Origin: Octopus bimaculoides
Lineage: Eukaryota
NCBI RefSeq assembly: GCF_001194135.2
Contig: NC_068989.1
Location: forward strand, 84,716,204-84,780,203
Reading direction: 5' to 3'
Length of the DNA stretch: 64,000 nucleotides
Position 1 is the first letter of the stretch, and each line of letters starts with the position of its first letter. The position numbers and the translations under genes were made by a program. Shown here piece after piece: positions 12,300-30,010 of the stretch. The notes beneath the pieces were generated by a model. That model searched no databases. It worked only from the letters and a program-made list of their open reading frames with translations, and was not told the origin of the DNA.

Positions 12300-12766
12300 A
12301 AAATCAAGATGTTAATTTGGATGCTATTCTTGGAGAACTCTGTGAACTTGAATGTCAGTTAAATACGACACAGAATGAAATATCAAAGTCTCTGGCTCCA
12401 TCGACGACGACTCCGCAGTCTACAGTAGGAATTAACTCTAGTGATCCTCCGGTACACAATGAACCGACAGACCCAATTCAAGCTGAACTTGATGCACTGG
12501 CTGCAGAAATCACCAAAGGACTGGGATTTGATACAAGCGATGATTTCTTTGGCATGCACTCTGAGCTTACGTCACTGTTCCCGGACGGCGGCTTGGATAT
12601 CACCGAAACGGACTCTGCTTATTCTGACAATGCTTCTTTGCCGTCTTCAGAGTCATTCACATCAATGGCCACAGTGTCTTCATCTGCCGATACCTCGAGC
12701 ACTGGAGACGCCTGTAGCACAAGCAGCACGAGCACACTGACGCCAGCTTCTGCCACCCAAACTGAA
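12300..12766 (+). CDS. RAPH1: Internal coding exon of an MRL-family adaptor (MIG-10/RIAM/Lamellipodin; RAPH1/APBB1IP/pico-like), N-terminal region upstream of the RA-PH domains
   Basis: Acceptor tgtttttctctttcAG ends at 12299; donor GAA|GTAAGT at 12767-12772. The 467-nt frame is open and non-repetitive (phase 1 in, phase 0 out): xNQDVNLDAILGELCELECQLNTTQ...IQAELDALAAEITKGL...ETDSAYSDNASLPSSESFTS...ASATQTE. The LDAILGELC and DSA(F/Y)SD..SL.SSES motifs match my recollection of invertebrate MRL proteins. The exon itself is well supported; the family call is from memory, not BLAST. The TTG start in the ORF track is an artefact. Confidence 0.7.
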
Positions 12767-12998
12767 GTAAGTTCCTTCACTTCAATAACATCCTTTTTGG
12801 GGGGGATTTTCTTCCTTTCCTTGTTTTCTTTTTCTCAAGACACTTTCATTGCAAAGCTCCTCACCCACAGTGTTTATAATATTGTACAATAATTAAAGCA
12901 GTGAAAAATATTCCCTTTAGAGGTGTGTTTTCTGAGCCCGGTATACCCCTGGAGTGCAGCCTAAAAGTCTGCTTGTACTGTCCCTTCCCTTACCAAAA

Positions 12999-15794: not shown

Positions 15795-17212
15795 AACAGA
15801 AACAACAACATTCATAATTTCAAATGTTGGCACAAAAATACAATTTGGAGTTGTGCTCTACTGTGAGACACCACGCTACAATTTGGGGTTGTGCTCTACT
15901 GTGAGACACCACGCTACAATTTGGGGTTGTGCTCTACTGTGAGACACCACGCTACCGTCCCTGTCTCTTCTGGCCAAATACTGTACTGTAAGACAACAGA
16001 ACATCACTTTTATCCCCTCTTCACTGCCATCTTGTAAATAATAATAATAATAATCCTTTCTACTAAAGGTACAAGGCCTGTAATTTGTGGTGAGGGGGAC
16101 TAGTTGATTACATTGACCTCCAGTGTTCAACTGGTACTTATTTCATTGACCCTGAAAGGATGAAAGGCAAAGTTGACCTCAGTGGAATTTGAACTCACAC
16201 CGTAAAGATGGACAAAATGCCATTAAGCATTTTACCCAGCATGCTAATGATTCTGCCAACTCACTGCCTTAAACCATGTTCCTATATTAGACAGTTCTTC
16301 TTTTTCTTCACCTTCTTCTTCTTCTTCTCCTCCTTCACTTTCCTTTGTTTTTTTCTTAAGCCTTTTAAAAACCATTGGAACACTTCTCAAATGTTTCCAT
16401 CAGAACAAACACACAAACAGACAAACCAGGAAAAAAAATTCAGCCTTTTTTTTTTTCTTCTTTTTTTGTATATATATTTTTTTCATCCTAGCGGAAACAT
16501 AACTTTACTATATTCCTTTCCATATTAGCTGCCATATTTTTATAAGGAATATTGACATGCTGTTTACTTAATTCCACCCTGAAACTAGCACCATCGCCAC
16601 CACCGCCACCCCTCCCTGCTAATCTCCACATTAAGGTTTGGTACCCTGTGACTTCCACTTACATTTCTGAACTTCTCAAATGACGCCAATACACTCAATT
16701 CCACAGAGCACGTGTGTTCTGTGAATAGAGTCATGTAAAGAATATTCTTTGAGACTCAACTCGACTGGGTTTTATTTTCTAAATTTTTATTTTATTTTAT
16801 ATATTTATTTATTTGTTTATTTATTTTTTACTTTTCCATTTTACTTTCTGAATTACTTTTCTTCATGTTTTAATGTTTCTCTCTCTCGTTGTTTCGCTAA
16901 CGTTACAGACTTCTTATGACTATTACGATATAAAATATGTATTTGTGTGTGTGTGTGTGTATGTGTGTGTGTACAATCTCTCTTCTACATCAGTCAGCCT
17001 GCAAGGAATTGAACATGAAAATCTTCAAGATAAAAGATATTTTATATACAACAGAAACAACATTCATAATTTCAGATGTTGGCACAAGAATACGATTTAG
17101 GGTTGTGCTGTACTTTGAGACACCACACTACAGTCCCTGTCTCTTCTGCCCAAATACTATACTTTAAGACAACAGAACATTACTTTTACCCACTTTTTAC
17201 TGCCATTTTGTA

Positions 17213-17341: not shown

Positions 17342-17372
<31 letters not shown>

Positions 17373-17575
17373 GTAATAATAATAATAATCCTTTCTACTA
17401 ATGGCACAAGGCATGTAATTTGTCAGGTAGAGATTAGTTGACTACATTGACCCCCAGTGTTTAACTGGTACTTATTTCATCAACCCCGAAAGGATGAAAG
17501 GCAAAGTTGACCTCGGCAGAATTTGAACTCAGAACACAGCAACGGGTGAAATGATGCTAAGCATTTCATCCAGCC
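15795..17575 (+). repeat. Local direct duplication (15795-16270 vs 17048-17575), each copy ending in a minus-strand family B SINE
   Basis: caacagaaacaac..ttcataatttca(a/g)atgttggcacaa...gtccctgtctcttctg..caaatact...ttgtaaataataat is shared by both copies about 1.25 kb apart. Confidence 0.85.
15841..15954 (+). repeat. Tandem repeat, 38-bp unit x3
   Basis: caatttgg(a/g)gttgtgctctactgtgagacaccacgcta at 15841, 15879 and 15917, with one mismatch among copies. Confidence 0.95.
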
Positions 17576-19275: not shown

Positions 19276-20007
19276 ACTGCAAGATAACGTATCATTTATT
19301 ATTCGTTTTACAATTAGAATTTTAGTAGACATGATAACATCTCCTTGAGTTGTGTCTGCAACAGATTTTGAGTTCCAGTTAAAGATGCTTCACTTCATTT
19401 TACATCACTTACGCCGGTAATATTCTTCAGAAAGGCATGCATAACACGACTTCCCATCAATTTTGGTGTCTGTAAAATCAAATACAATCATTAAGAGCCT
19501 AAATAATTGTAATATGTTATGACTATGTTCTGTGGAGCTGTGAGGTGTATCTACGACTTCTTTGAAGTTGAGAGAGTTAGACGAGCGACATACTGAATTA
19601 TAAAATCAGTGCCGTTGTTGGGACTCGATCATTCGACCCTTTGATCGATGGTTTGATCTCGTGACCACTAAGATTTTCGCTGTCGAACTTCGCTTGGAAT
19701 AAAGCTGAGAAGTGCAAGGGAGACAACTCTACTCTGACACAACCACACACTGTGATGTTCTGTTTAACTTGACGGATTATTGAATGGATTCTCATATGGG
19801 AATGAAGAGGGTGTTACTGGGCGGGGGGAGGGATTATGGAGAACGGTGGGATCACGTAGACAACTAATTCTTATTTCAAAGTTATATCACATGACTAAGA
19901 CAGTACTGTTACTTAATACTCTTTACAAGGGAAAGATATCAACATCGCTTTATCTCATTCCACTTTACACACACTCATAATCAGCGGTGCCTACTCGGTA
20001 CATCGTG

Positions 20008-20735
20008 AGCTAGCAGAATCGTTAGCGCGCCGGACGAAATGCTTAGCGATAATTCGCCCGTCGCTACGTTCTGAGTTCAAATTCCGCCGAGGTTGACTCT
20101 GTCTTTCATCTTTTCGGGGTCGATAAATTAAGTACCAGTGAAACACTGGGGGTCAACGTAATCGACTTATTCCCTCCCCCAGAATGGCTGCTCTTGTGAA
20201 AAAATTTGAAACCATTATTATTAGAGCAAGCCAGCCGGACCATTAGCAATCTGGGCACAATGCCTAGCAGTATTTCCTCCGGCTTAACATACCGAGTACA
20301 AATTCTGCCAAAATCGACATGGCCTTTCATCCTTTCAGAGTGAGTAAAATAAATACCAGTCAAGCACTGGGGTCGAGGTAATCTACTCTCCACATCTTCC
20401 AAAATTTAAAGCTTTCTACCTATAGTAGAACGGATCATTATTATAACTATTATTATCATTAAAGTGTTGAGCTGGCCAAACCGTTAGATGGATAATAGTT
20501 ATCCTCTCTGTTATAGGCTGGGCAATAAAGAAATAAGAAACGCTAGCACGCCGGGCGAAATGCTCAGCGGGTATTTCGTCTGTCTTTACCTTATGAGTTC
20601 AAATTCCGTCGAGGTCGACTTTGCCTTTCATCCTTTCGAGATCGATAAATTAAGTACCAGTTGTGTAATGGAGTCGATCTAATCGACTTCCCCCCTCCCC
20701 CAAAATGTCAGGCCTTGTGCCTAGAGTAGAAAAGG
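20008..20735 (+). mobile_element. Three head-to-tail SINE family B copies
   Basis: Family B heads near 20008, 20235 and 20545, each followed by the core. Confidence 0.8.
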
Positions 20736-20912
20736 ATACTTTTCTTGGGTATTTAATTAATGACTTACTGACACAGATTTTGTTGTTCACTTATAGTAGG
20801 TTTTTTTTTACTTTTGCACAGGAAGTTTAAACAGGATAAACCTATCCTGGTGGTTGAAATGGGCTTATGAAAAAATATTACCTTTATCCTTTAGACATTG
20901 GTTTAGTTTTCA

Positions 20913-21067
20913 GGCATAACTACAGGGTTTTACCCCCCAGACTTTGGGAGGTCATAACTTTCAGAAAAATGAATATTTTTTAATGAAATTTTCTCATTAA
21001 AAAATATTCATTTTTCTGAAAGTTATGACCTCCCAAAGTCTGGGGGGTAAAACCCTGTAGTTATGCC
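20913..21067. repeat. Perfect palindrome: 74-bp arms, 7-nt spacer, flanked by an 8-bp direct repeat
   Basis: 20913-20986 is the exact reverse complement of 20994-21067; spacer AATTTTC. AGTTTTCA occurs at 20905-20912 and 21068-21075. Confidence 0.95.
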
Positions 21068-21704
21068 AGTTTTCATTACTTATTTACGGAAACATTTTAG
21101 TGTCATCATGCAGTAAATCATATTTTTGTGTGAAGCTGGTGTGAATTCTCCAACTTTACGATAGATAGAAAAAAAACTGAGATTTTATTAAAAGAAACAG
21201 GAAAGGAGAGTTGCCAATCGTCAGAAGCAATCTGTTCAGTTACGTATGTATAGGAACGAATGTGTGTTTTCAAGAAGGCGACTTTGTTGTGGTGGAGACC
21301 AATCTCTCGGGGTATGAGAGTGAGATTCAATTTAATGCGGCTGTAGTCAAGGTACATAACTCTGCCTCACTCAGTCACTACATTAGATTCTGTCTTCATT
21401 TTGCAAGTTGACTTTAAGAAGGAAATCATCTGGGTGTGTTTATGTGATACAGACACCAGGAATGAGAGATTCAATTACTAGACTACTGGCCCCATGGACA
21501 AAGACGCTTAACTGTGCTTATTCCAGTTTCACCCATTATAGTTCAATTGCTCGCAGTTGTAACGAATGATACACATCCATACAGATATAAAATTCATTGA
21601 TTGAATAAATAAAATATCTTACCTTCCACCACCATCAACAGTACCGCTATTGTAAAGCTCAAAGCAACTCTAAACAAAATAAATTTCAAATTTTATCGGC
21701 CCAG

Positions 21705-21792
21705 GATTGGCTGCGTGGTAAGAAGTTCGCTTCCCAACCACATGGTTCCGGGTTCAGTCCCACTGTGTGGCACGTTGGGCAATTGTCTTCTA
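21705..21792 (+). mobile_element. SINE family A head fragment
   Basis: ggattggctgcgtggtaagaagttcgcttcccaaccacatggttccgggttcagtcccactg. Confidence 0.8.
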
Positions 21793-22184
21793 CTGATGAC
21801 GGCGGTAATGGAGATTATAATCCTTTCTGTTCTAGGCACGAGGTCTAAAATTTGAGGAAAGGGAGTCTTGTCGATTACATTGACCCCAGTACTCGACTGG
21901 TCCTTATTTTATTGACCCTAAAAACAAAAGTCGACCTCAACAGAATTTGAACTCTGAACAAAAAGCCGGAAGAAATACCACTAAGCATTTTGCCCAACGA
22001 TTCTGCCAGCTCACCACTTTAAGAGAGGTAACAATAGTTTCGAATTTTGGCACAGGGCCAACAATTTTTTAAGGGGAGGGGGAATCCATTGCATCAACCT
22101 CAGTATATTTTATCGAACCCAAAAGACATCAAATATGGTGTTAATTTTGATGATGTTAGTGGTTATGAGGATAATAATAATAAT

Positions 22185-22549
22185 AAGAGCACTCAGAGAG
22201 CGCAAACCACCGCCAAGGCAACACCAACGTCCTCTCAACGATTAGCCAGAGATGATTTTTAAAATGAGAATATCTGGAATAAACTCGACTGTTCTCACAA
22301 ACAAGAATACTAAAAACGAACCCGACTGCCCTCAATAATGAAGTAAAAGAACCGGAAAAATAATCCAGAATTCTTCTCCGGTATCAGATCGATCCCAAAA
22401 TCTAATCCGTTCGTGCCAGTCTCGAGGCCAAACTTCCCTGGAAGTTTCATCCGAATCCATCCAGCGGTTCTTGAGATATCTTGTCCACGAACAAACAAAC
22501 AAACACGACTGAAAAAAAATATCTCCGTCTTCGCTAAGGCGGAGGTAAT
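22185..22549 (+). mobile_element. Helentron/HINE (DINE-1-like) non-autonomous element
   Basis: 5' subterminal accaccgcc (22206-22214) is complementary to 3' ggcggaggt (22538-22546). There is an internal (AAAC)n and a 3' stem-loop ctccgtctt-cgct-aaggcggag. A second copy lies on the minus strand at 63072-63180. The classification is inferred from architecture. Confidence 0.6.
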
Positions 22550-22554
22550 AAAGT

Positions 22555-22945
22555 TTTCAAATTTTGACAAAAGGCCGGCAATTTCAGGGTAAAGGTAATT
22601 CGATTATATCGACCCCAGTGTTCAACTGGTACTTATTTTATCGACCCCGAAAGGACGAAAGGCATAGTCGACCTCGGCGGAATTTGAACTCAGAACGTAA
22701 GGACGGGCGAAATGCCGCTGAGCATTGTGTCTGGCGTGCTAACCATTCCACTAGCTCGCCGACCCCAATACTACTACTACTACTACTAAAGGCACTAAGC
22801 CTGAAATTTTGGGGGAGTGGACTAGTCAATTACATCGACCTCAGTACGCAACTGGTACTTAATTTATCGACTCCGAAAGGATGAAAGGTGAAGTCGACCT
22901 CAGCAGAATTTGAACTCAGAACGTTAAGACGAGCGAAATACCGCT
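22555..22945 (-). mobile_element. Two SINE family B copies
   Basis: Reverse complement of the family B core at ~22555-22760 and ~22790-22945. Confidence 0.85.
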
Positions 22946-25900
22946 ACATCAAATATGGTGTTAATTTTGACGATGTTAGTGGTTATGAGGATGATAATAG
23001 TATGATGTGTTATTTATAAATATTTAATGTAATACTGGTCCTGTCATATAAATTTGCTCAACGATTCAACAAATATGGAATCTAAGGGACATAACCACCG
23101 CCAGTAACTACTTTCATTTTCTCTCCTATGGTGTTTATTTATGAAAGAAAGAGCGGAGGGGAGGAAATATCCCTACTACCACCCCTGTCGTCACCACCAT
23201 CACCCTAACATCAGAAATTCATTTTGCCCCTGTACTACCACTCTCACTTCTTTCCTCCACTCGGTTATATTGTAAAATGTCACCCCAACCAAGCCCACCA
23301 CCGCCAAAAAAAAAAAACCATCTCCGCTAAAGATGAAAGTGAAACTGTTGTCAAAACTTCACGTTACAACACATAACTATTAATAATCCCCCGATGAGGT
23401 AGCATCAAATGGGATTATCACCTGTCTTCAGATAATCCCCAGTGGAGGAGGAGGTGGTGGTAATGTACAAGATATGAAGGACCTACTGGGTGGTATGTGT
23501 TGAAACAGTACTGTTGCTGGTGGCGGTGGCGGTGGTGGTGGTGGTGGTAGTAGTAGTAGTAGTGACGGTGGCGACGGACCACCGTGTTGATAGTATTAGA
23601 AGTTGAAGGTGATGTGTATATATATATTTTTTCATTTGTTTCAGTCATTTGACTGTGGCCATACTGGAGCATCGCCTTTAGTCGAGCAAATCGACCCCAG
23701 GACTTATATATACATACACACACACACATTTACATCATATAATGTTGTTTGTATAAATATATACATATGTGTGTGTGTACGAATATGCAACAATGTATGT
23801 ATATTTATATATGTGCATATATATATACGCACGCACACACACGTGTGTATGTATACATCATTTATCGTTTGCATTCCATTCTGGGTCGGATAGGACAGTC
23901 TCCGAGGAGCCAGAGGATTGCATTGCGCTGTCTGCTTCGGTATCTTTTGCTATGGCTGGATGCCCTTTCTAAGGCCCACCACTTTAAAGAGCGTGCTGGG
24001 TGCCATTTTCGTAGCACGGAAACTAGTGAGGTCACCAAAAAAAGTGCAGGGCCCCTGAACTGAGGGTGGTGGCTTTATGCCACGTGTTGAGAGACTAAAA
24101 AATGATAGAGGGACAGGAACGGGTGTCTTGTGATATAGTGACACAAATGTGAAATAGATAAATATATACACATGCACACATGTATATACGTACACATACA
24201 TGTTCATATGTATATAAATTGGTGTATATACATGTATGTACATAAATATGTGCTTATATATGAGTAGGTCATGATCTCGTATACGTATATATAACTATAT
24301 ACTTGCACATACATGTATCTGTATTTGACTATATATGTGTGCGTGCATTGCTTTACGCAGAAAAAGCAGTGTATATATATATATATATATATATACATAC
24401 ATACTGTTTTTTCAGCGTACAGCAAAGAACACAGGGAAACCCTCAATATGTGGCCCTAGTCAAGCAGCGCGCGTGCGCTCACACATCAAACGTGATAAAT
24501 CAATGAATCAACCAATCGATGTCAATTACAGTGAACCTACTTCCTGTTAGATACGACTATGTGTCCCTCTGCTGGGGCCAGCAGTCAACTATGTCCCCTT
24601 TCCTCTCGCTATTTAGTCATTGCAGGCTGCTGGTATCACATTCGACTCCCTCTCGTTCTTTCTCTCTTTCATTCTCTTTCACAATTTCCCTTTCGATTGG
24701 TCGTGGTTGGAGAAATTTCAGTGAATGGTTTGTGAGTAGGTGAATGTGTGTGTGTGTGTGTTTGTATTAGTGTATGGTTTAACATTTATTTGTGTGTAAT
24801 ACAATATTAGGATAAAGACTTTATAAGAATTTATCAAGCAGTTAGCGTGAAAAAAACATCAATTTTTTCCATAAATATATTTAATTTTTATAAAGGCATT
24901 ACTATACAATAATGCCTCACGCTAAGAGGGACTCCATAAGTCAAAACTACTAAAATATTTGTGTGTATGTGTGTGAGAGTATGTCTTTATTATGTTTTCT
25001 TAGCTTTTATAAGTTCCACTCACTGGAGAGCGAGCAATGCTAAAGGTATTAGTTTCACCGATATCTACATCATATCAATAATTGATCCCAGCACTTATTT
25101 TATTGATCTCTATTCATTGAATGGCTAAGTTACATTCTGACTTAAATGATACACGATTTGCACTCTCACACACACATGTATCTTAAGGGCTTCCAAAATT
25201 TCTCTCAAATGCCACAAGATAATGTTCATCACGACTTAGCACTCGCTACATGTGATCCAGGATCGTTCATCGTTCCATGCTGTATGTCATCTTTTGAAAA
25301 GCCATGAGCCCCACAACATCCCATTTCTCTATTCCCTTCAAATGCGAGTCAAGCTTTTCTTGGGGAAAAGGGAGCAAAGAAATCGATATTAGCCTTTGTT
25401 CTACGCATGCGCGTCATAGCTAGGGTTGCGCTTATCTGCACACACGCATACACGCACGCATTAAAATGGAGACTGTGATGTGGTTGCTCGCTCAACCTGC
25501 TAGAAACAGCAGCCAAAATTGTATCTTAAATCATACCCTACCGTTTTATAAAGGACAGGTTGAATAATGTAGTCTGCGGTATATTATGCCTGAACAAAAG
25601 ACAGGATGGTGACATTTCGAACAGGAGGGCGTGCTTTGGGGGTTAATTAACAATACAAACATACACACTGGGACATCACACACATAACATTTGTGCCTAT
25701 ATACACTTACGTACGCCTTCAAGGATCTGCATGTATGTACACTAGCGTATTAACACATGCACACACTCGCACGTATACTCTTAGTTCTATACAAAGCTAT
25801 ACATACACACACTAGGACATCAACACGTACTTAGCCATACTAAGACACACACAGACGTATACATGTATGCATACATAGTCTTGTACAAATGTACAAACAT

Positions 25901-28186: not shown

Positions 28187-30010
28187 CTGATGGATCACAT
28201 GCATAACAAAACATAATAAAGTGCACAATATGTAATTCAATTACTTCATGTATAATGCATATCTATCACATGGCTGTGTGGTAAGTATCTTGCTTACCAA
28301 CCACATGGTTCTGGATTCAGTCCCACTGTGTGGCACCTTGGGCAAGTGTCTTCTACTATAGCCTCGGGCCGACCAAAGCCTTGTGAGTGGATTTGGTAGA
28401 TGGAAACTGAAAGAAGCCCGTCGTATATATATGTATATATATATATANNNNNNNNNNNNNNNNNNNNNNNNNNNNNNNNNNNNNNNNNNNNNNNNNNNNN
28501 NNNNNNNNNNNNNNNNNNNNNNNNNNNNNNNNNNNNNNNNNNNNNNNNNNNNNNNNNNNNNNNNNNNNNNNNNNNNNNNNNNNNNNNNNNNNNNNNNNNN
28601 NNNNNNNNNNNNNNNNNNNNNNNNNNNNNNNNNNNNNNNNNNNNNNNNNNNNNNNNNNNNNNNNAACTAAAGGCGGTGCTCCAGCATGGCCACAGTCAAA
28701 TGACTGAAAAGTGTAAAAGAGTAAATATTTTGAGTATTGTAGAAATATAAACCAGTTCATTGCCAATAAATTTTAAAAGTAAAATCATATATGGACCTCC
28801 CCCCCCCCAAGGGTCATACGGACCCCACATGAGAAACCCTCATGTGCAGGCTCCTTTATTGGCTTCTCAGGCTGTGGTAGTAGAGTGCTGTTCGGTGTGA
28901 CTTTGTCAGTCTCTGTCTGTGTGTGTAACAGCATTGTAACATGGCATTACTGGATCTTTGTAGAAAGTCAACACCTGATCAGGTCTGGAGTTTTTTTCTG
29001 GCACCCAAGGGGAAGAAGGCTCGTCTTTTGGATGTAGTTTAGAATGTTTGTCTCTGAGAAACAGCAGCAACACTGTCCAGACATGTGGTCTGGTCTGTCT
29101 GTGTGTTTAGCAACAGCAACAACTATCCCAGACAGTTGAGCAATGCTGTAATGTGATGTATACGTGTTTAACAGCAGTACGATGTGGATTTGTGAACAGT
29201 ACCATAATGTGGCTTTAGGATGTCTATGCATGCAACAACAGCACTGCCCCATATATAAGAACCGTATCATGATGTCATCTAAGATGTTTGTGTTAGAGCA
29301 CCATTAGCCCAGATAGAAAAACAATATTGTAATATGGTCTACAGTGTTTATATATGTAACAGCGGCACTGTCAAAGATATGGAAGCAGTACTGTAATATG
29401 GTTTGTTATATTTGTATGTGTAACAGCAGCTGTAGCAGCAGCAGCACTGTCCCAGACATGTGATGTAGGTTTCTTCCACCTGTACTTTGTTTAGATCAGG
29501 AGTTCCCAAGCACCAGTCTGCAGACCAGTGCCAGGCCATGAATCAGTTTGGTACCAGGCCTCACAGGAAGAATAAATTTCTAGATTTTATTTCTGTTTTA
29601 TTGACTATCACAGTTTGCTGGGTGTTTTTGCAATATATTCTTTGTAAGCCTAGTACTTATTCTATCAGTCTCTTTTGCTGAACCGCTAAGTTACGGGGAC
29701 ATAAACACACCAGCATCGGTTGTCAATGTTGGTGGGACAAACATATACACACACGTACATAAATATATACGACGAGCCTCTTTCAGCTTCCGTCTGTCTA
29801 CCAAATCCACTCATAAGGCTTTGGTCAGCCCGAGGCTATAGTAGAAGACACTTGCCCAAGGTACCACGCAGTGGGACTGAACCCAGAACCATGTGGCTGG
29901 TAAGCAAGATACTTACCACACAGCCATGTGATAGATATGCATTATACATGAAGTAATTGAATTACATATTGTGCACTTTATTATGTTTTGTTATGCATGT
30001 GATCCATCAG
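28187..30010. repeat. 113-bp identical inverted repeat pair (28187-28299 / 29898-30010), each continuing into an inverted family A SINE
   Basis: Exact reverse-complement match of ctgatggatcacatgcataac...gtaagtatcttgcttacca. The SINE bodies beyond the match differ at about ten sites. Confidence 0.9.

What the first reader, a model, noticed from the sequence alone, without database searches (positions are those of the whole stretch)
20905..21075. Perfect 155-bp palindrome flanked by an exact 8-bp direct repeat
Seen: 74-bp arms with zero mismatches, a 7-nt spacer, and AGTTTTCA immediately outside both arms. Established: 8-bp TSDs are made by hAT, P and Merlin transposases, and some MULEs; GG-starting TIRs fit Merlin or MULE better than hAT. 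Inference: either a very young, almost wholly palindromic MITE, or a fold-back templated insertion using 8-bp microhomology (polymerase-theta-like repair). Either way it gives a 74-bp perfect dsRNA/cruciform in the intron, an ideal ADAR or Dicer substrate. This is the most striking unexplained structure in the window.
Basis: partly seen in the sequence, partly recalled or inferred. Interest (0 to 1): 0.72.

Follow-up and report, generated by a model that had tools for sequence, protein, structure and literature searches.

The report
Young hairpin-shaped miniature transposon insertion
A 155-base, almost perfectly self-complementary piece of DNA, bracketed by an 8-base duplication of its insertion site, is most likely a recently inserted miniature DNA transposon (MITE); that is ordinary in an animal genome, though I could not check for other copies.

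Summary
Arms 20913-20986 and 20994-21067 are 74 nt and 100% complementary. They are separated by a 7-nt non-palindromic spacer (AATTTTC) and flanked by AGTTTTCA on both sides in direct orientation. None of this is expected by chance.

The element lies in unique DNA, 2.5 kb from the nearest assembly gap and 8.1 kb downstream of a consensus splice donor of an annotated exon.

The best reading is a young, non-coding, almost wholly palindromic DNA transposon (a MITE). It belongs to a superfamily that duplicates 8 bp of target. The GG...CC ends, 8-bp duplication and long inverted repeats fit Merlin best. The ends and target sequence do not fit hAT.

- The flanking 8-mer is direct, not inverted.
- No template exists in the 64 kb window.
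- 155 bp is far larger than typical templated insertions.

Family membership could not be shown. The ADAR/Dicer-substrate idea is a reasonable inference but is untested.

Verdict: new member of a known kind, low interest.

The parts
20905..20912 (.). Left copy of the 8-bp target-site duplication, AGTTTTCA
   Evidence: (D8); chance about 2e-5
20913..20986 (.). Left arm (terminal inverted repeat), 74 nt, begins GGCATAACTACAGGG
   Evidence: (I1); unique in the window apart from its partner
20987..20993 (.). Non-palindromic spacer / hairpin loop, AATTTTC
20994..21067 (.). Right arm, exact reverse complement of the left arm, ends ...CCCTGTAGTTATGCC
   Evidence: (I1)
21068..21075 (.). Right copy of the 8-bp target-site duplication, AGTTTTCA
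   Evidence: (D8)
12293..12768 (+). Context only: upstream exon of the host gene. It matches residues 39-196 of a spliced protein fragment (UniParc UPI0006959FF9) and ends at a consensus donor GAA|GTAAGT, so transcription probably runs on across the palindrome.

Best explanation
This is a recent insertion of a non-autonomous, non-coding DNA transposon (a MITE of the fold-back or 'hairpin' type) that consists almost entirely of its two 74-bp terminal inverted repeats.

Inferred mechanism: a transposase encoded elsewhere in the genome bound the two identical ends. It cut the target with an 8-bp stagger at AGTTTTCA and joined the element in. Gap repair then produced the two direct copies of AGTTTTCA.

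The superfamily is one that makes 8-bp duplications. Merlin fits best (GG...CC ends, 8-9-bp duplication, long inverted repeats), and a Mutator-like element is second. The zero mismatches across 148 arm sites and 16 duplication sites argue for a young insertion: under 1.8% per-site divergence at 95%, if the source copy was itself perfect. That is much younger than the SINE-like repeats around it, which are 70-86% alike.

The near-total palindromy with only a 7-nt loop suggests the family founder arose from one transposon end by fold-back (snap-back) synthesis, as in the Izsvak model for Angel. This part is inference.

If the host gene is transcribed across the element, either orientation gives a 74-bp perfect RNA duplex. 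That follows from the predicted fold; any editing or dicing of it is inferred.
For: - Structure: 74-nt perfect inverted repeats plus an exact 8-bp direct duplication directly abutting them, far beyond chance.
- Non-coding: stop codons in every frame.
- Clean insertion site: the flanks 20740-21690 are unique in the window, and joining them gives a continuous AT-rich empty site ...CATTGGTTTAGTTTTCA|TTACTTATT....
- Assembly context: the element lies inside an 8.2-kb gap-free contig, 2,467 and 5,613 bp from the nearest N runs.
- Merlin criteria from the literature (inverted repeats 24-462 bp, terminal 5'-GG, 8-9-bp duplication; PMC8101967) are all met by the sequence.
- hAT target preferences are not met.
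- Not a vector or bacterial contaminant: no match in plasmids or phages or in prokaryote, viral or metagenome contigs.
- Circumstantial: a 23-mer I recalled from an abundant octopus repeat hits 12 sites in the window, and Octopus bimaculoides is reported to carry unusually many Merlin transposase-like sequences (191; PMC8101967).
- Precedent: palindromic MITEs and the fold-back origin model are documented (PMC5172404).
Against: - No second copy, full or single-arm, was found in the 64-kb window, even allowing 5 mismatches in 20.
- No open reading frame carrying the arm's translation exists among 5.8 billion clustered proteins.
- No paper holds the terminal sequence.
- No transposase or any transposon protein domain was found in the 150 longest reading-frame pieces of the window.
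- So the defining MITE property, a multi-copy family with different flanking duplications, is untested.
- The window is a gapped draft assembly (14 N runs), and I had no read-level support.
- Perfect 74-bp arms are unusual for most MITE copies.
Confidence: 0.7

Rival explanations
1. Assembly artefact or distortion. One possibility is that a short 'hairpin contig' was placed between two contigs by the scaffolder or gap-filler. The other is that a longer real element with inverted repeats of at least 74 bp had its interior collapsed into a 7-nt loop by a short-read graph assembler.
For: The window is a gapped draft: 14 N runs totalling 4,424 N, many next to microsatellites. Perfect inverted repeats longer than the k-mer length are a known difficulty for graph assemblers (established knowledge). 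No independent assembly or reads could be fetched.
Against: The element is 2.5 kb and 5.6 kb from the nearest gaps, inside continuous unique sequence. An artefactual fold-back makes X-loop-reverse-complement(X) that includes the flank. Here the flanks are not inverted, and an exact direct 8-bp duplication brackets the arms. The arm-spacer-arm junction k-mers must exist in reads at usable depth to be assembled. In the 'collapsed interior' version the locus is still a transposon insertion with an 8-bp duplication.
Confidence: 0.12
2. Transposase-independent insertion during break repair. Two forms are possible. A snap-back (inverted-dimer) fragment copied from a distant locus was captured at a staggered double-strand break. 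Or an existing copy elsewhere was copied in by synthesis primed from an AGTTTTCA microhomology. The second form is the reader's polymerase-theta-like option, generalised.
For: Inverted pairs of fragments from distant loci are inserted at breaks in yeast, and inversions can form on extrachromosomal single-stranded DNA (PMC11724301, abstract and section headings). No family copy has been shown, so a one-off event is not excluded.
Against: Local fold-back copying would invert the flank, but the 8-mer is direct. There is no template within 64 kb. Reported fold-back insertions are mostly 5-34 bp, against 155 bp here. End-joining capture does not normally duplicate 8 bp of target. The microhomology version needs a pre-existing copy flanked by the same 8-mer, which itself presupposes a transposon.
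Confidence: 0.1
3. The hairpin is primarily a functional RNA gene (a microRNA or endogenous siRNA hairpin precursor) rather than a mobile element.
For: The RNA fold is extremely stable (-131.8 kcal/mol). Permissive Rfam searching gives E-values from 1e-9 to 2e-15 against long-hairpin microRNA families such as MIR2606, MIR5512 and MIR5070.
Against: All Rfam hits are far below their gathering scores (81 against 140 bits for the best). They occur on both strands with near-equal scores, as any perfect long hairpin would, and nothing passes at gathering threshold. A 74-bp perfect stem is unlike animal microRNA precursors (established knowledge). The direct 8-bp duplication points to insertion. No conservation data were available.
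Confidence: 0.03

Closest known systems
Merlin-superfamily non-autonomous elements / MITEs (Feschotte 2004; summarised in PMC8101967)
   Same: 8-bp target duplication, terminal 5'-GG...CC-3', and an inverted-repeat length (74 bp) inside the reported 24-462-bp range. Such elements occur in animal genomes, and O. bimaculoides is reported as Merlin-rich.
   Different: No element with the same ends that encodes a DDE_Tnp_IS1595 transposase has been shown. No other copy has been seen. Almost the whole element is inverted repeat.
Palindromic / fold-back MITEs: zebrafish Angel and Arabidopsis 'Hairpin' elements (PMC5172404)
   Same: Short non-coding elements that are nearly entirely a stem-loop with an A/T-rich centre. 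A fold-back replication model explains how such palindromes arise.
   Different: The target duplications differ: Hairpin is listed with the 5-bp CTWAR and inverted repeats of 114 bp in a 238-bp element. There is no sequence similarity, and those are multi-copy families, which is unproven here.
hAT-derived MITEs (for example Mar in Drosophila, PMC3517528)
   Same: 8-bp target duplication, small size, no coding capacity.
   Different: hAT ends are short and begin YARNG (own knowledge); this element begins GGCAT. AGTTTTCA fits neither nTnnnnAn nor nnnTAnnn.
Templated fold-back insertions at double-strand breaks (PMC11724301)
   Same: They produce an inverted duplication with a short loop.
   Different: Those are mostly 5-34 bp and are copied from sequence adjacent to the break, so they invert the flank. 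They have no direct target duplication.
MITE-type long-hairpin microRNA precursor families in Rfam (MIR2606, MIR5512, MIR5070 and others)
   Same: Long, near-perfect hairpin fold; sub-threshold structural matches.
   Different: Scores are far below gathering thresholds. These are plant families, and the matches are strand-symmetric, so they reflect shape only.

Membership tests
MITE (generic) | Short (under about 800 bp) and non-coding | tested here: met
   155 bp; stop codons in all six frames, longest open stretch 26 codons
MITE (generic) | Terminal inverted repeats directly flanked by a target-site duplication | tested here: met
   74-nt perfect inverted repeats and an exact 8-bp direct repeat abutting them
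MITE (generic) | Multi-copy family whose copies have different flanking duplications | tested here: inconclusive
   No other copy in the 64-kb window or in the reachable collections.
MITE (generic) | An autonomous partner sharing the same ends | not testable with these tools
   No transposase domain in the 150 longest reading-frame pieces of the window; the rest of the genome was unavailable.
Merlin superfamily | 8- or 9-bp target-site duplication | tested here: met
   8 bp; criterion from PMC8101967
Merlin superfamily | Inverted repeats begin with 5'-GG | tested here: met
   The element begins GGCAT and ends ATGCC; criterion from PMC8101967
Merlin superfamily | Inverted-repeat length 24-462 bp | tested here: met
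   74 bp; range from PMC8101967
Merlin superfamily | Mobilised by a DDE_Tnp_IS1595 transposase from an element with matching ends | not testable with these tools
   No such gene in the window; the host genome was unreachable.
hAT superfamily | 8-bp target-site duplication | tested here: met
hAT superfamily | Target preference nTnnnnAn (Ac family) or nnnTAnnn (Buster family) | tested here: not met
   AGTTTTCA and its complement TGAAAACT have G at position 2, C at position 7, and TT or AA at positions 4-5 (criterion). This is a preference, not an absolute rule.
hAT superfamily | Short inverted repeats beginning YARNG (own knowledge) | tested here: not met
   The ends are GGCAT. A CAGGG lies 10 nt inside the arm, but the 8-mers outside it are inverted, not direct.
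Templated fold-back insertion (polymerase-theta / microhomology-mediated repair) | The inserted sequence is an inverted copy of sequence adjacent to the break, so the palindrome includes the flank | tested here: not met
   The flanking 8-mers are direct and the flanks beyond them are unrelated. The arm has no other copy in 64 kb.
Templated fold-back insertion (polymerase-theta / microhomology-mediated repair) | Typical size of a few to a few tens of bp | tested here: not met
   155 bp against mostly 5-34 bp (PMC11724301)
Rfam long-hairpin microRNA families (MIR2606 and others) | Score at or above the family's gathering threshold | tested here: not met
   Best score 81.4 bits against a threshold of 139.7; no hit at gathering threshold

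The most novel reading that the evidence does not exclude
The hairpin is not a member of any transposon family. Instead it is a one-off, de novo palindromic insertion: a snap-back DNA molecule captured at a break with an 8-nt stagger. That would be a germline mutational mechanism that mimics a transposon's target-site duplication. A milder version is that it is the first sighting of a currently active, perfectly palindromic Merlin-type MITE in an octopus germline, placing a polymorphic 74-bp double-stranded RNA in a gene intron.
Probability: 0.08. Interest if true: 0.55.

Novelty: new member of a known kind. Interest (0 to 1): 0.2.

Why it matters
If it is confirmed as a young MITE, it shows that a DNA transposon system making 8-bp duplications (probably Merlin) has been active very recently in this genome. 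It would also give a handle, the GGCATAACTACAGGG end, for finding the autonomous element.

A 74-bp perfect duplex inside a pre-mRNA is a strong candidate for promiscuous A-to-I editing or for dicing into small RNAs. That would be of some interest if the host is a cephalopod, where editing is extensive. In itself, though, a MITE in non-coding DNA is routine annotation material.

Tried and rejected
**Searches for further copies (all negative)**
- Looked in the window with 30- and 32-mers at up to 3 mismatches, short-word BLASTN, and a 20-mer at up to 5 mismatches.
- Scanned two exact arm segments (22 and 21 nt) against metagenome, viral and prokaryote-genome contigs: 0 hits each.
- Ran BLASTN against plasmids and phages to exclude a vector or contaminant: no match.
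- Searched a composite peptide built from every open stretch of the arm against 5.8 billion proteins, hoping that spurious reading frames across other copies had been called in relatives' assemblies: no candidate.

**Attempts to reach an independent assembly of the locus (empty-site test)**
- Looked up the neighbouring 79-aa reading frame, the 191-aa exon reading frame and P0001: none on record.
- The only orthologous locus fetched (L001, about 50% identical at the exon) shares nothing else with the window.

**Paralogous empty site**
- Asked whether the flanks belong to a repeat that would supply one. They do not: 20740-21690 is unique in the window.

**Other transposon-like structures in the window**
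- Two scans for other inverted-repeat-plus-duplication structures found only this element. The other two outputs are a microsatellite and part of a larger inverted repeat.

**Sub-terminal repeat in the arm**
- CATAACT occurs at arm positions 3 and 41, but this is not significant (p about 0.06).
- The 25-nt, 80% similarity between the upstream flank (20855-20879) and the palindrome centre is A/T-rich and at chance level.

**Autonomous partner**
- Pfam on the 150 longest reading-frame pieces gave only low-complexity hits.

**Rfam**
- Only sub-threshold matches driven by hairpin shape.

**Organism**
- The third protein search, with a reading frame that looked like a reverse-transcriptase tail, found nothing.
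- Literature searches for the element's sequence and for the repeat's sequence found nothing.

**Downstream exons of the host gene**
- Not located, so intron status remains 'likely' only.

Full report
**1. Observation**

The region reads ...ggtttAGTTTTCA | GGCATAACTACAGGGTTTTACCCCCCAGACTTTGGGAGGTCATAACTTTCAGAAAAATGAATATTTTTTAATGA | AATTTTC | reverse complement of the arm | AGTTTTCAttactt....
- The repeat finder gives arms 20913-20986 and 20994-21067, 74 nt and 100% complementary, with 7 nt between them. It also gives the 8-mer AGTTTTCA at 20905-20912 and 21068-21075. A script confirmed exact reverse complementarity and the spacer AATTTTC.
- The duplication is exactly 8 bp and cannot be shifted or lengthened.
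- Chance is excluded. Arm segments match nowhere else, with 0 expected in shuffles. The DNA hairpin folds at -88.1 kcal/mol with z = -26.7, and the RNA hairpin at -131.8 kcal/mol with z = -26.5.
- An identical 8-mer at this spacing has a composition-based probability of 2.2e-5. In the window it otherwise occurs only in seven short runs of consecutive positions, which I take to be simple or tandem repeats without having read them.

**2. Setting**

The window is a gapped draft of an animal genome.
- It has 14 N runs totalling 4,424 N, many of them beside TA/CA microsatellites. GC content is about 38%.
- It is full of SINE-like repeats that are 70-86% alike. Three copies in the same orientation lie at 20005-20738, just upstream of the palindrome.
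- The palindrome itself sits in sequence that is unique within the window (20740-21690). It lies inside an 8.2-kb gap-free stretch, 2,467 and 5,613 bp from the nearest gaps.
- Two exons of a + strand gene lie at 9254-9358 and 12293-12768. They match a spliced protein fragment, UniParc UPI0006959FF9. The second exon ends at a consensus donor, GAA|GTAAGT.
- The palindrome is therefore 8.1 kb downstream of a splice donor and is probably intronic. I did not find the next exon.
- The organism is not established by any tool. A 23-mer that I recalled from memory as part of an abundant octopus repeat hits 12 sites in the window, two of them exactly. SINE dominance is typical of octopus genomes (PMC8967140). 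An octopus is therefore a reasonable lead.

**3. What it is**

The anatomy is that of a cut-and-paste DNA transposon insertion.
- It has inverted ends directly abutted by a direct duplication of the target.
- Joining the flanks gives a continuous empty site...CATTGGTTTAGTTTTCA|TTACTTATT....
- The element is non-coding, with stops in all frames.
- An 8-bp duplication restricts the choice to hAT, P, Merlin, some Mutator-like elements and a few rare superfamilies (established knowledge).
- The literature criteria for Merlin are all met: inverted repeats of 24-462 bp, a conserved terminal 5'-GG and 8-9-bp duplications (PMC8101967).
- hAT target preferences, nTnnnnAn or nnnTAnnn, are not met by AGTTTTCA. 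The GGCAT end is also unlike the hAT YARNG end (own knowledge).
- If the host is an octopus, it is relevant that O. bimaculoides is singled out as having 191 Merlin transposase-like sequences (PMC8101967).
- I therefore read it as a Merlin-type, or less likely Mutator-type, MITE.

**4. Age and origin**

- There are no differences across 148 arm sites or 16 duplication sites. This bounds per-site divergence since insertion below about 1.8% at 95%, provided the source copy was a perfect palindrome and the arms do not correct each other. That is far younger than the surrounding SINE-like copies.
- An element that is 95% inverted repeat with a 7-nt loop is more easily made by fold-back synthesis from one transposon end than by a symmetrical internal deletion. 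This is the Izsvak model for the palindromic Angel MITE, and comparable 'Hairpin' elements exist in Arabidopsis (PMC5172404). This step is inference.

**5.

A fold-back templated insertion using 8-bp microhomology is unlikely.
- Snap-back copying extends the palindrome into the flank, giving TGAAAACT on the far side. Here the 8-mers are direct.
- The arm has no template anywhere in 64 kb.
- Such insertions are mostly 5-34 bp (PMC11724301).
- A more elaborate repair route remains possible at low probability: capture of an inverted dimer from a distant locus, which that paper also describes. It does not naturally explain the 8-bp duplication.

**6. Artefact**

Fold-back artefacts give X-loop-reverse-complement(X) including the flanks, usually at contig ends. 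This structure is internal, has non-inverted unique flanks and carries a direct duplication. I cannot rule out that a longer interior was collapsed by the assembler. No reads or independent assembly could be reached.

**7. What could not be shown**

The defining property of a MITE family, many copies with different duplications and an autonomous partner, is untested.
- The window holds no second copy and no other structure with inverted repeats plus a duplication.
- The window shows no transposase domain in its 150 longest reading-frame pieces.
- Public collections that could be scanned by DNA hold no match.
- A peptide search designed to catch reading frames running into other copies found nothing.
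- No paper contains the end sequence.
- The nearest relatives in the protein collection are only about 60% identical at the neighbouring exon. The host species is evidently not represented, so these negatives say little about the host genome.

**8. RNA**

- At gathering thresholds Rfam finds nothing in the window.
- A permissive search gives strand-symmetric, sub-threshold matches to long-hairpin microRNA families, which reflect shape only.
- If the gene is transcribed through the site, a 74-bp perfect duplex will form.
- That duplexes of this length are edited promiscuously by ADAR enzymes or diced is established knowledge. Whether this one is remains untested.

**9. Verdict**

- The structure is real.
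- It is most likely a young, palindromic MITE with Merlin-like ends (confidence 0.7).
- The rivals are an assembly distortion (0.12), a transposase-independent repair insertion (0.10) and a primary RNA gene (0.03).
- It is a new member of a known kind, and interest is low (0.2) unless it turns out to be single-copy.

Noticed in passing
window 20005-20220, 20243-20461, 20536-20738 (+); 21813-22022 and 22546-22946 (-); also about 6046-6216, 9463-9675, 11969-12128, 16037-16272, 17362-17574, 40576-40751, 41292-41500, 42574-43214: A SINE-like repeat family of roughly 150-210 bp has well over 20 copies in the window, 70-86% alike. Three copies in the same orientation lie directly upstream of the palindrome, and inverted copies lie about 2 kb downstream. 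Together they form long imperfect inverted repeats around the site.
   Followed up: partly
window 21690-21794 and 12 sites containing GGCACCTTGGGCAAGTGTCTTCT (for example 6280-6302, 28332-28354, 29843-29865, 46669-46691, 55080-55102, 62304-62326): A second abundant repeat of about 90-100 bp. Its 23-mer core, which I recalled from memory as an octopus genomic repeat, matches 12 sites, 2 of them exactly. This is a lead, not a proof, that the window comes from an octopus.
   Followed up: partly
window 28187-28400 and 29797-30010: A 214-nt inverted repeat, 97% complementary, with arms 1,396 nt apart. The left arm ends 48 nt before an assembly gap (28448-28664). There is no direct duplication at its outer ends, so it is not obviously a transposon. 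It may be a recent inverted duplication or two young repeat copies.
   Followed up: partly
window 1797-1917 and 3116-3236: A 121-nt inverted repeat, 98% complementary, with arms 1,198 nt apart. The complementarity continues into the flanks with an indel (GTTCGGC / GCCGAAC).
   Followed up: partly
window 9254-9358 and 12293-12768 (+): Two exons of a host gene match a spliced 196-aa protein fragment (UniParc UPI0006959FF9). The acceptor is ...TTTCTCTTTCAG| and the donor is GAA|GTAAGT. The motif NLDAILGELCELECQL resembles the N-terminus of MRL-family adaptors (RIAM / lamellipodin), but that is from memory only. Pfam finds no domain.
   Followed up: partly
window 15839-15955: A 38-bp unit repeated 3.1 times in tandem with 98% matches (TACAATTTGGGGTTGTGCTCTACTGTGAGACACCACGC). 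It appears to be a young minisatellite, apparently inside a repeat copy.
   Followed up: no
window 42171-42590 (-): An open frame ending ...GLIIDVAAPGDQHIMKERETVDKYGDLRIEITKMWQPCESNIKVIPIVIGALGSI resembles, from memory, the conserved C-terminal tail of invertebrate non-LTR retrotransposon proteins. Neither the protein search nor Pfam gave a hit.
   Followed up: partly
window 1080-1661, 9759-10326, 45128-45890, 50730-51290, 59121-59684, 60331-60846 and 8 shorter runs: There are 14 runs of N (4,424 bases in all), most bordered by TA/CA/TG microsatellites. The gaps therefore appear to mark unassembled simple repeats in a short-read draft.
   Followed up: no
window 20855-20879 versus 20984-21008: A 25-nt stretch of the upstream flank is 80% identical to the centre of the palindrome (TGAAAT...AAAAAATATT). 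It is A/T-rich and at chance level by BLAST E-value, so it was not taken as evidence of local templating.
   Followed up: yes
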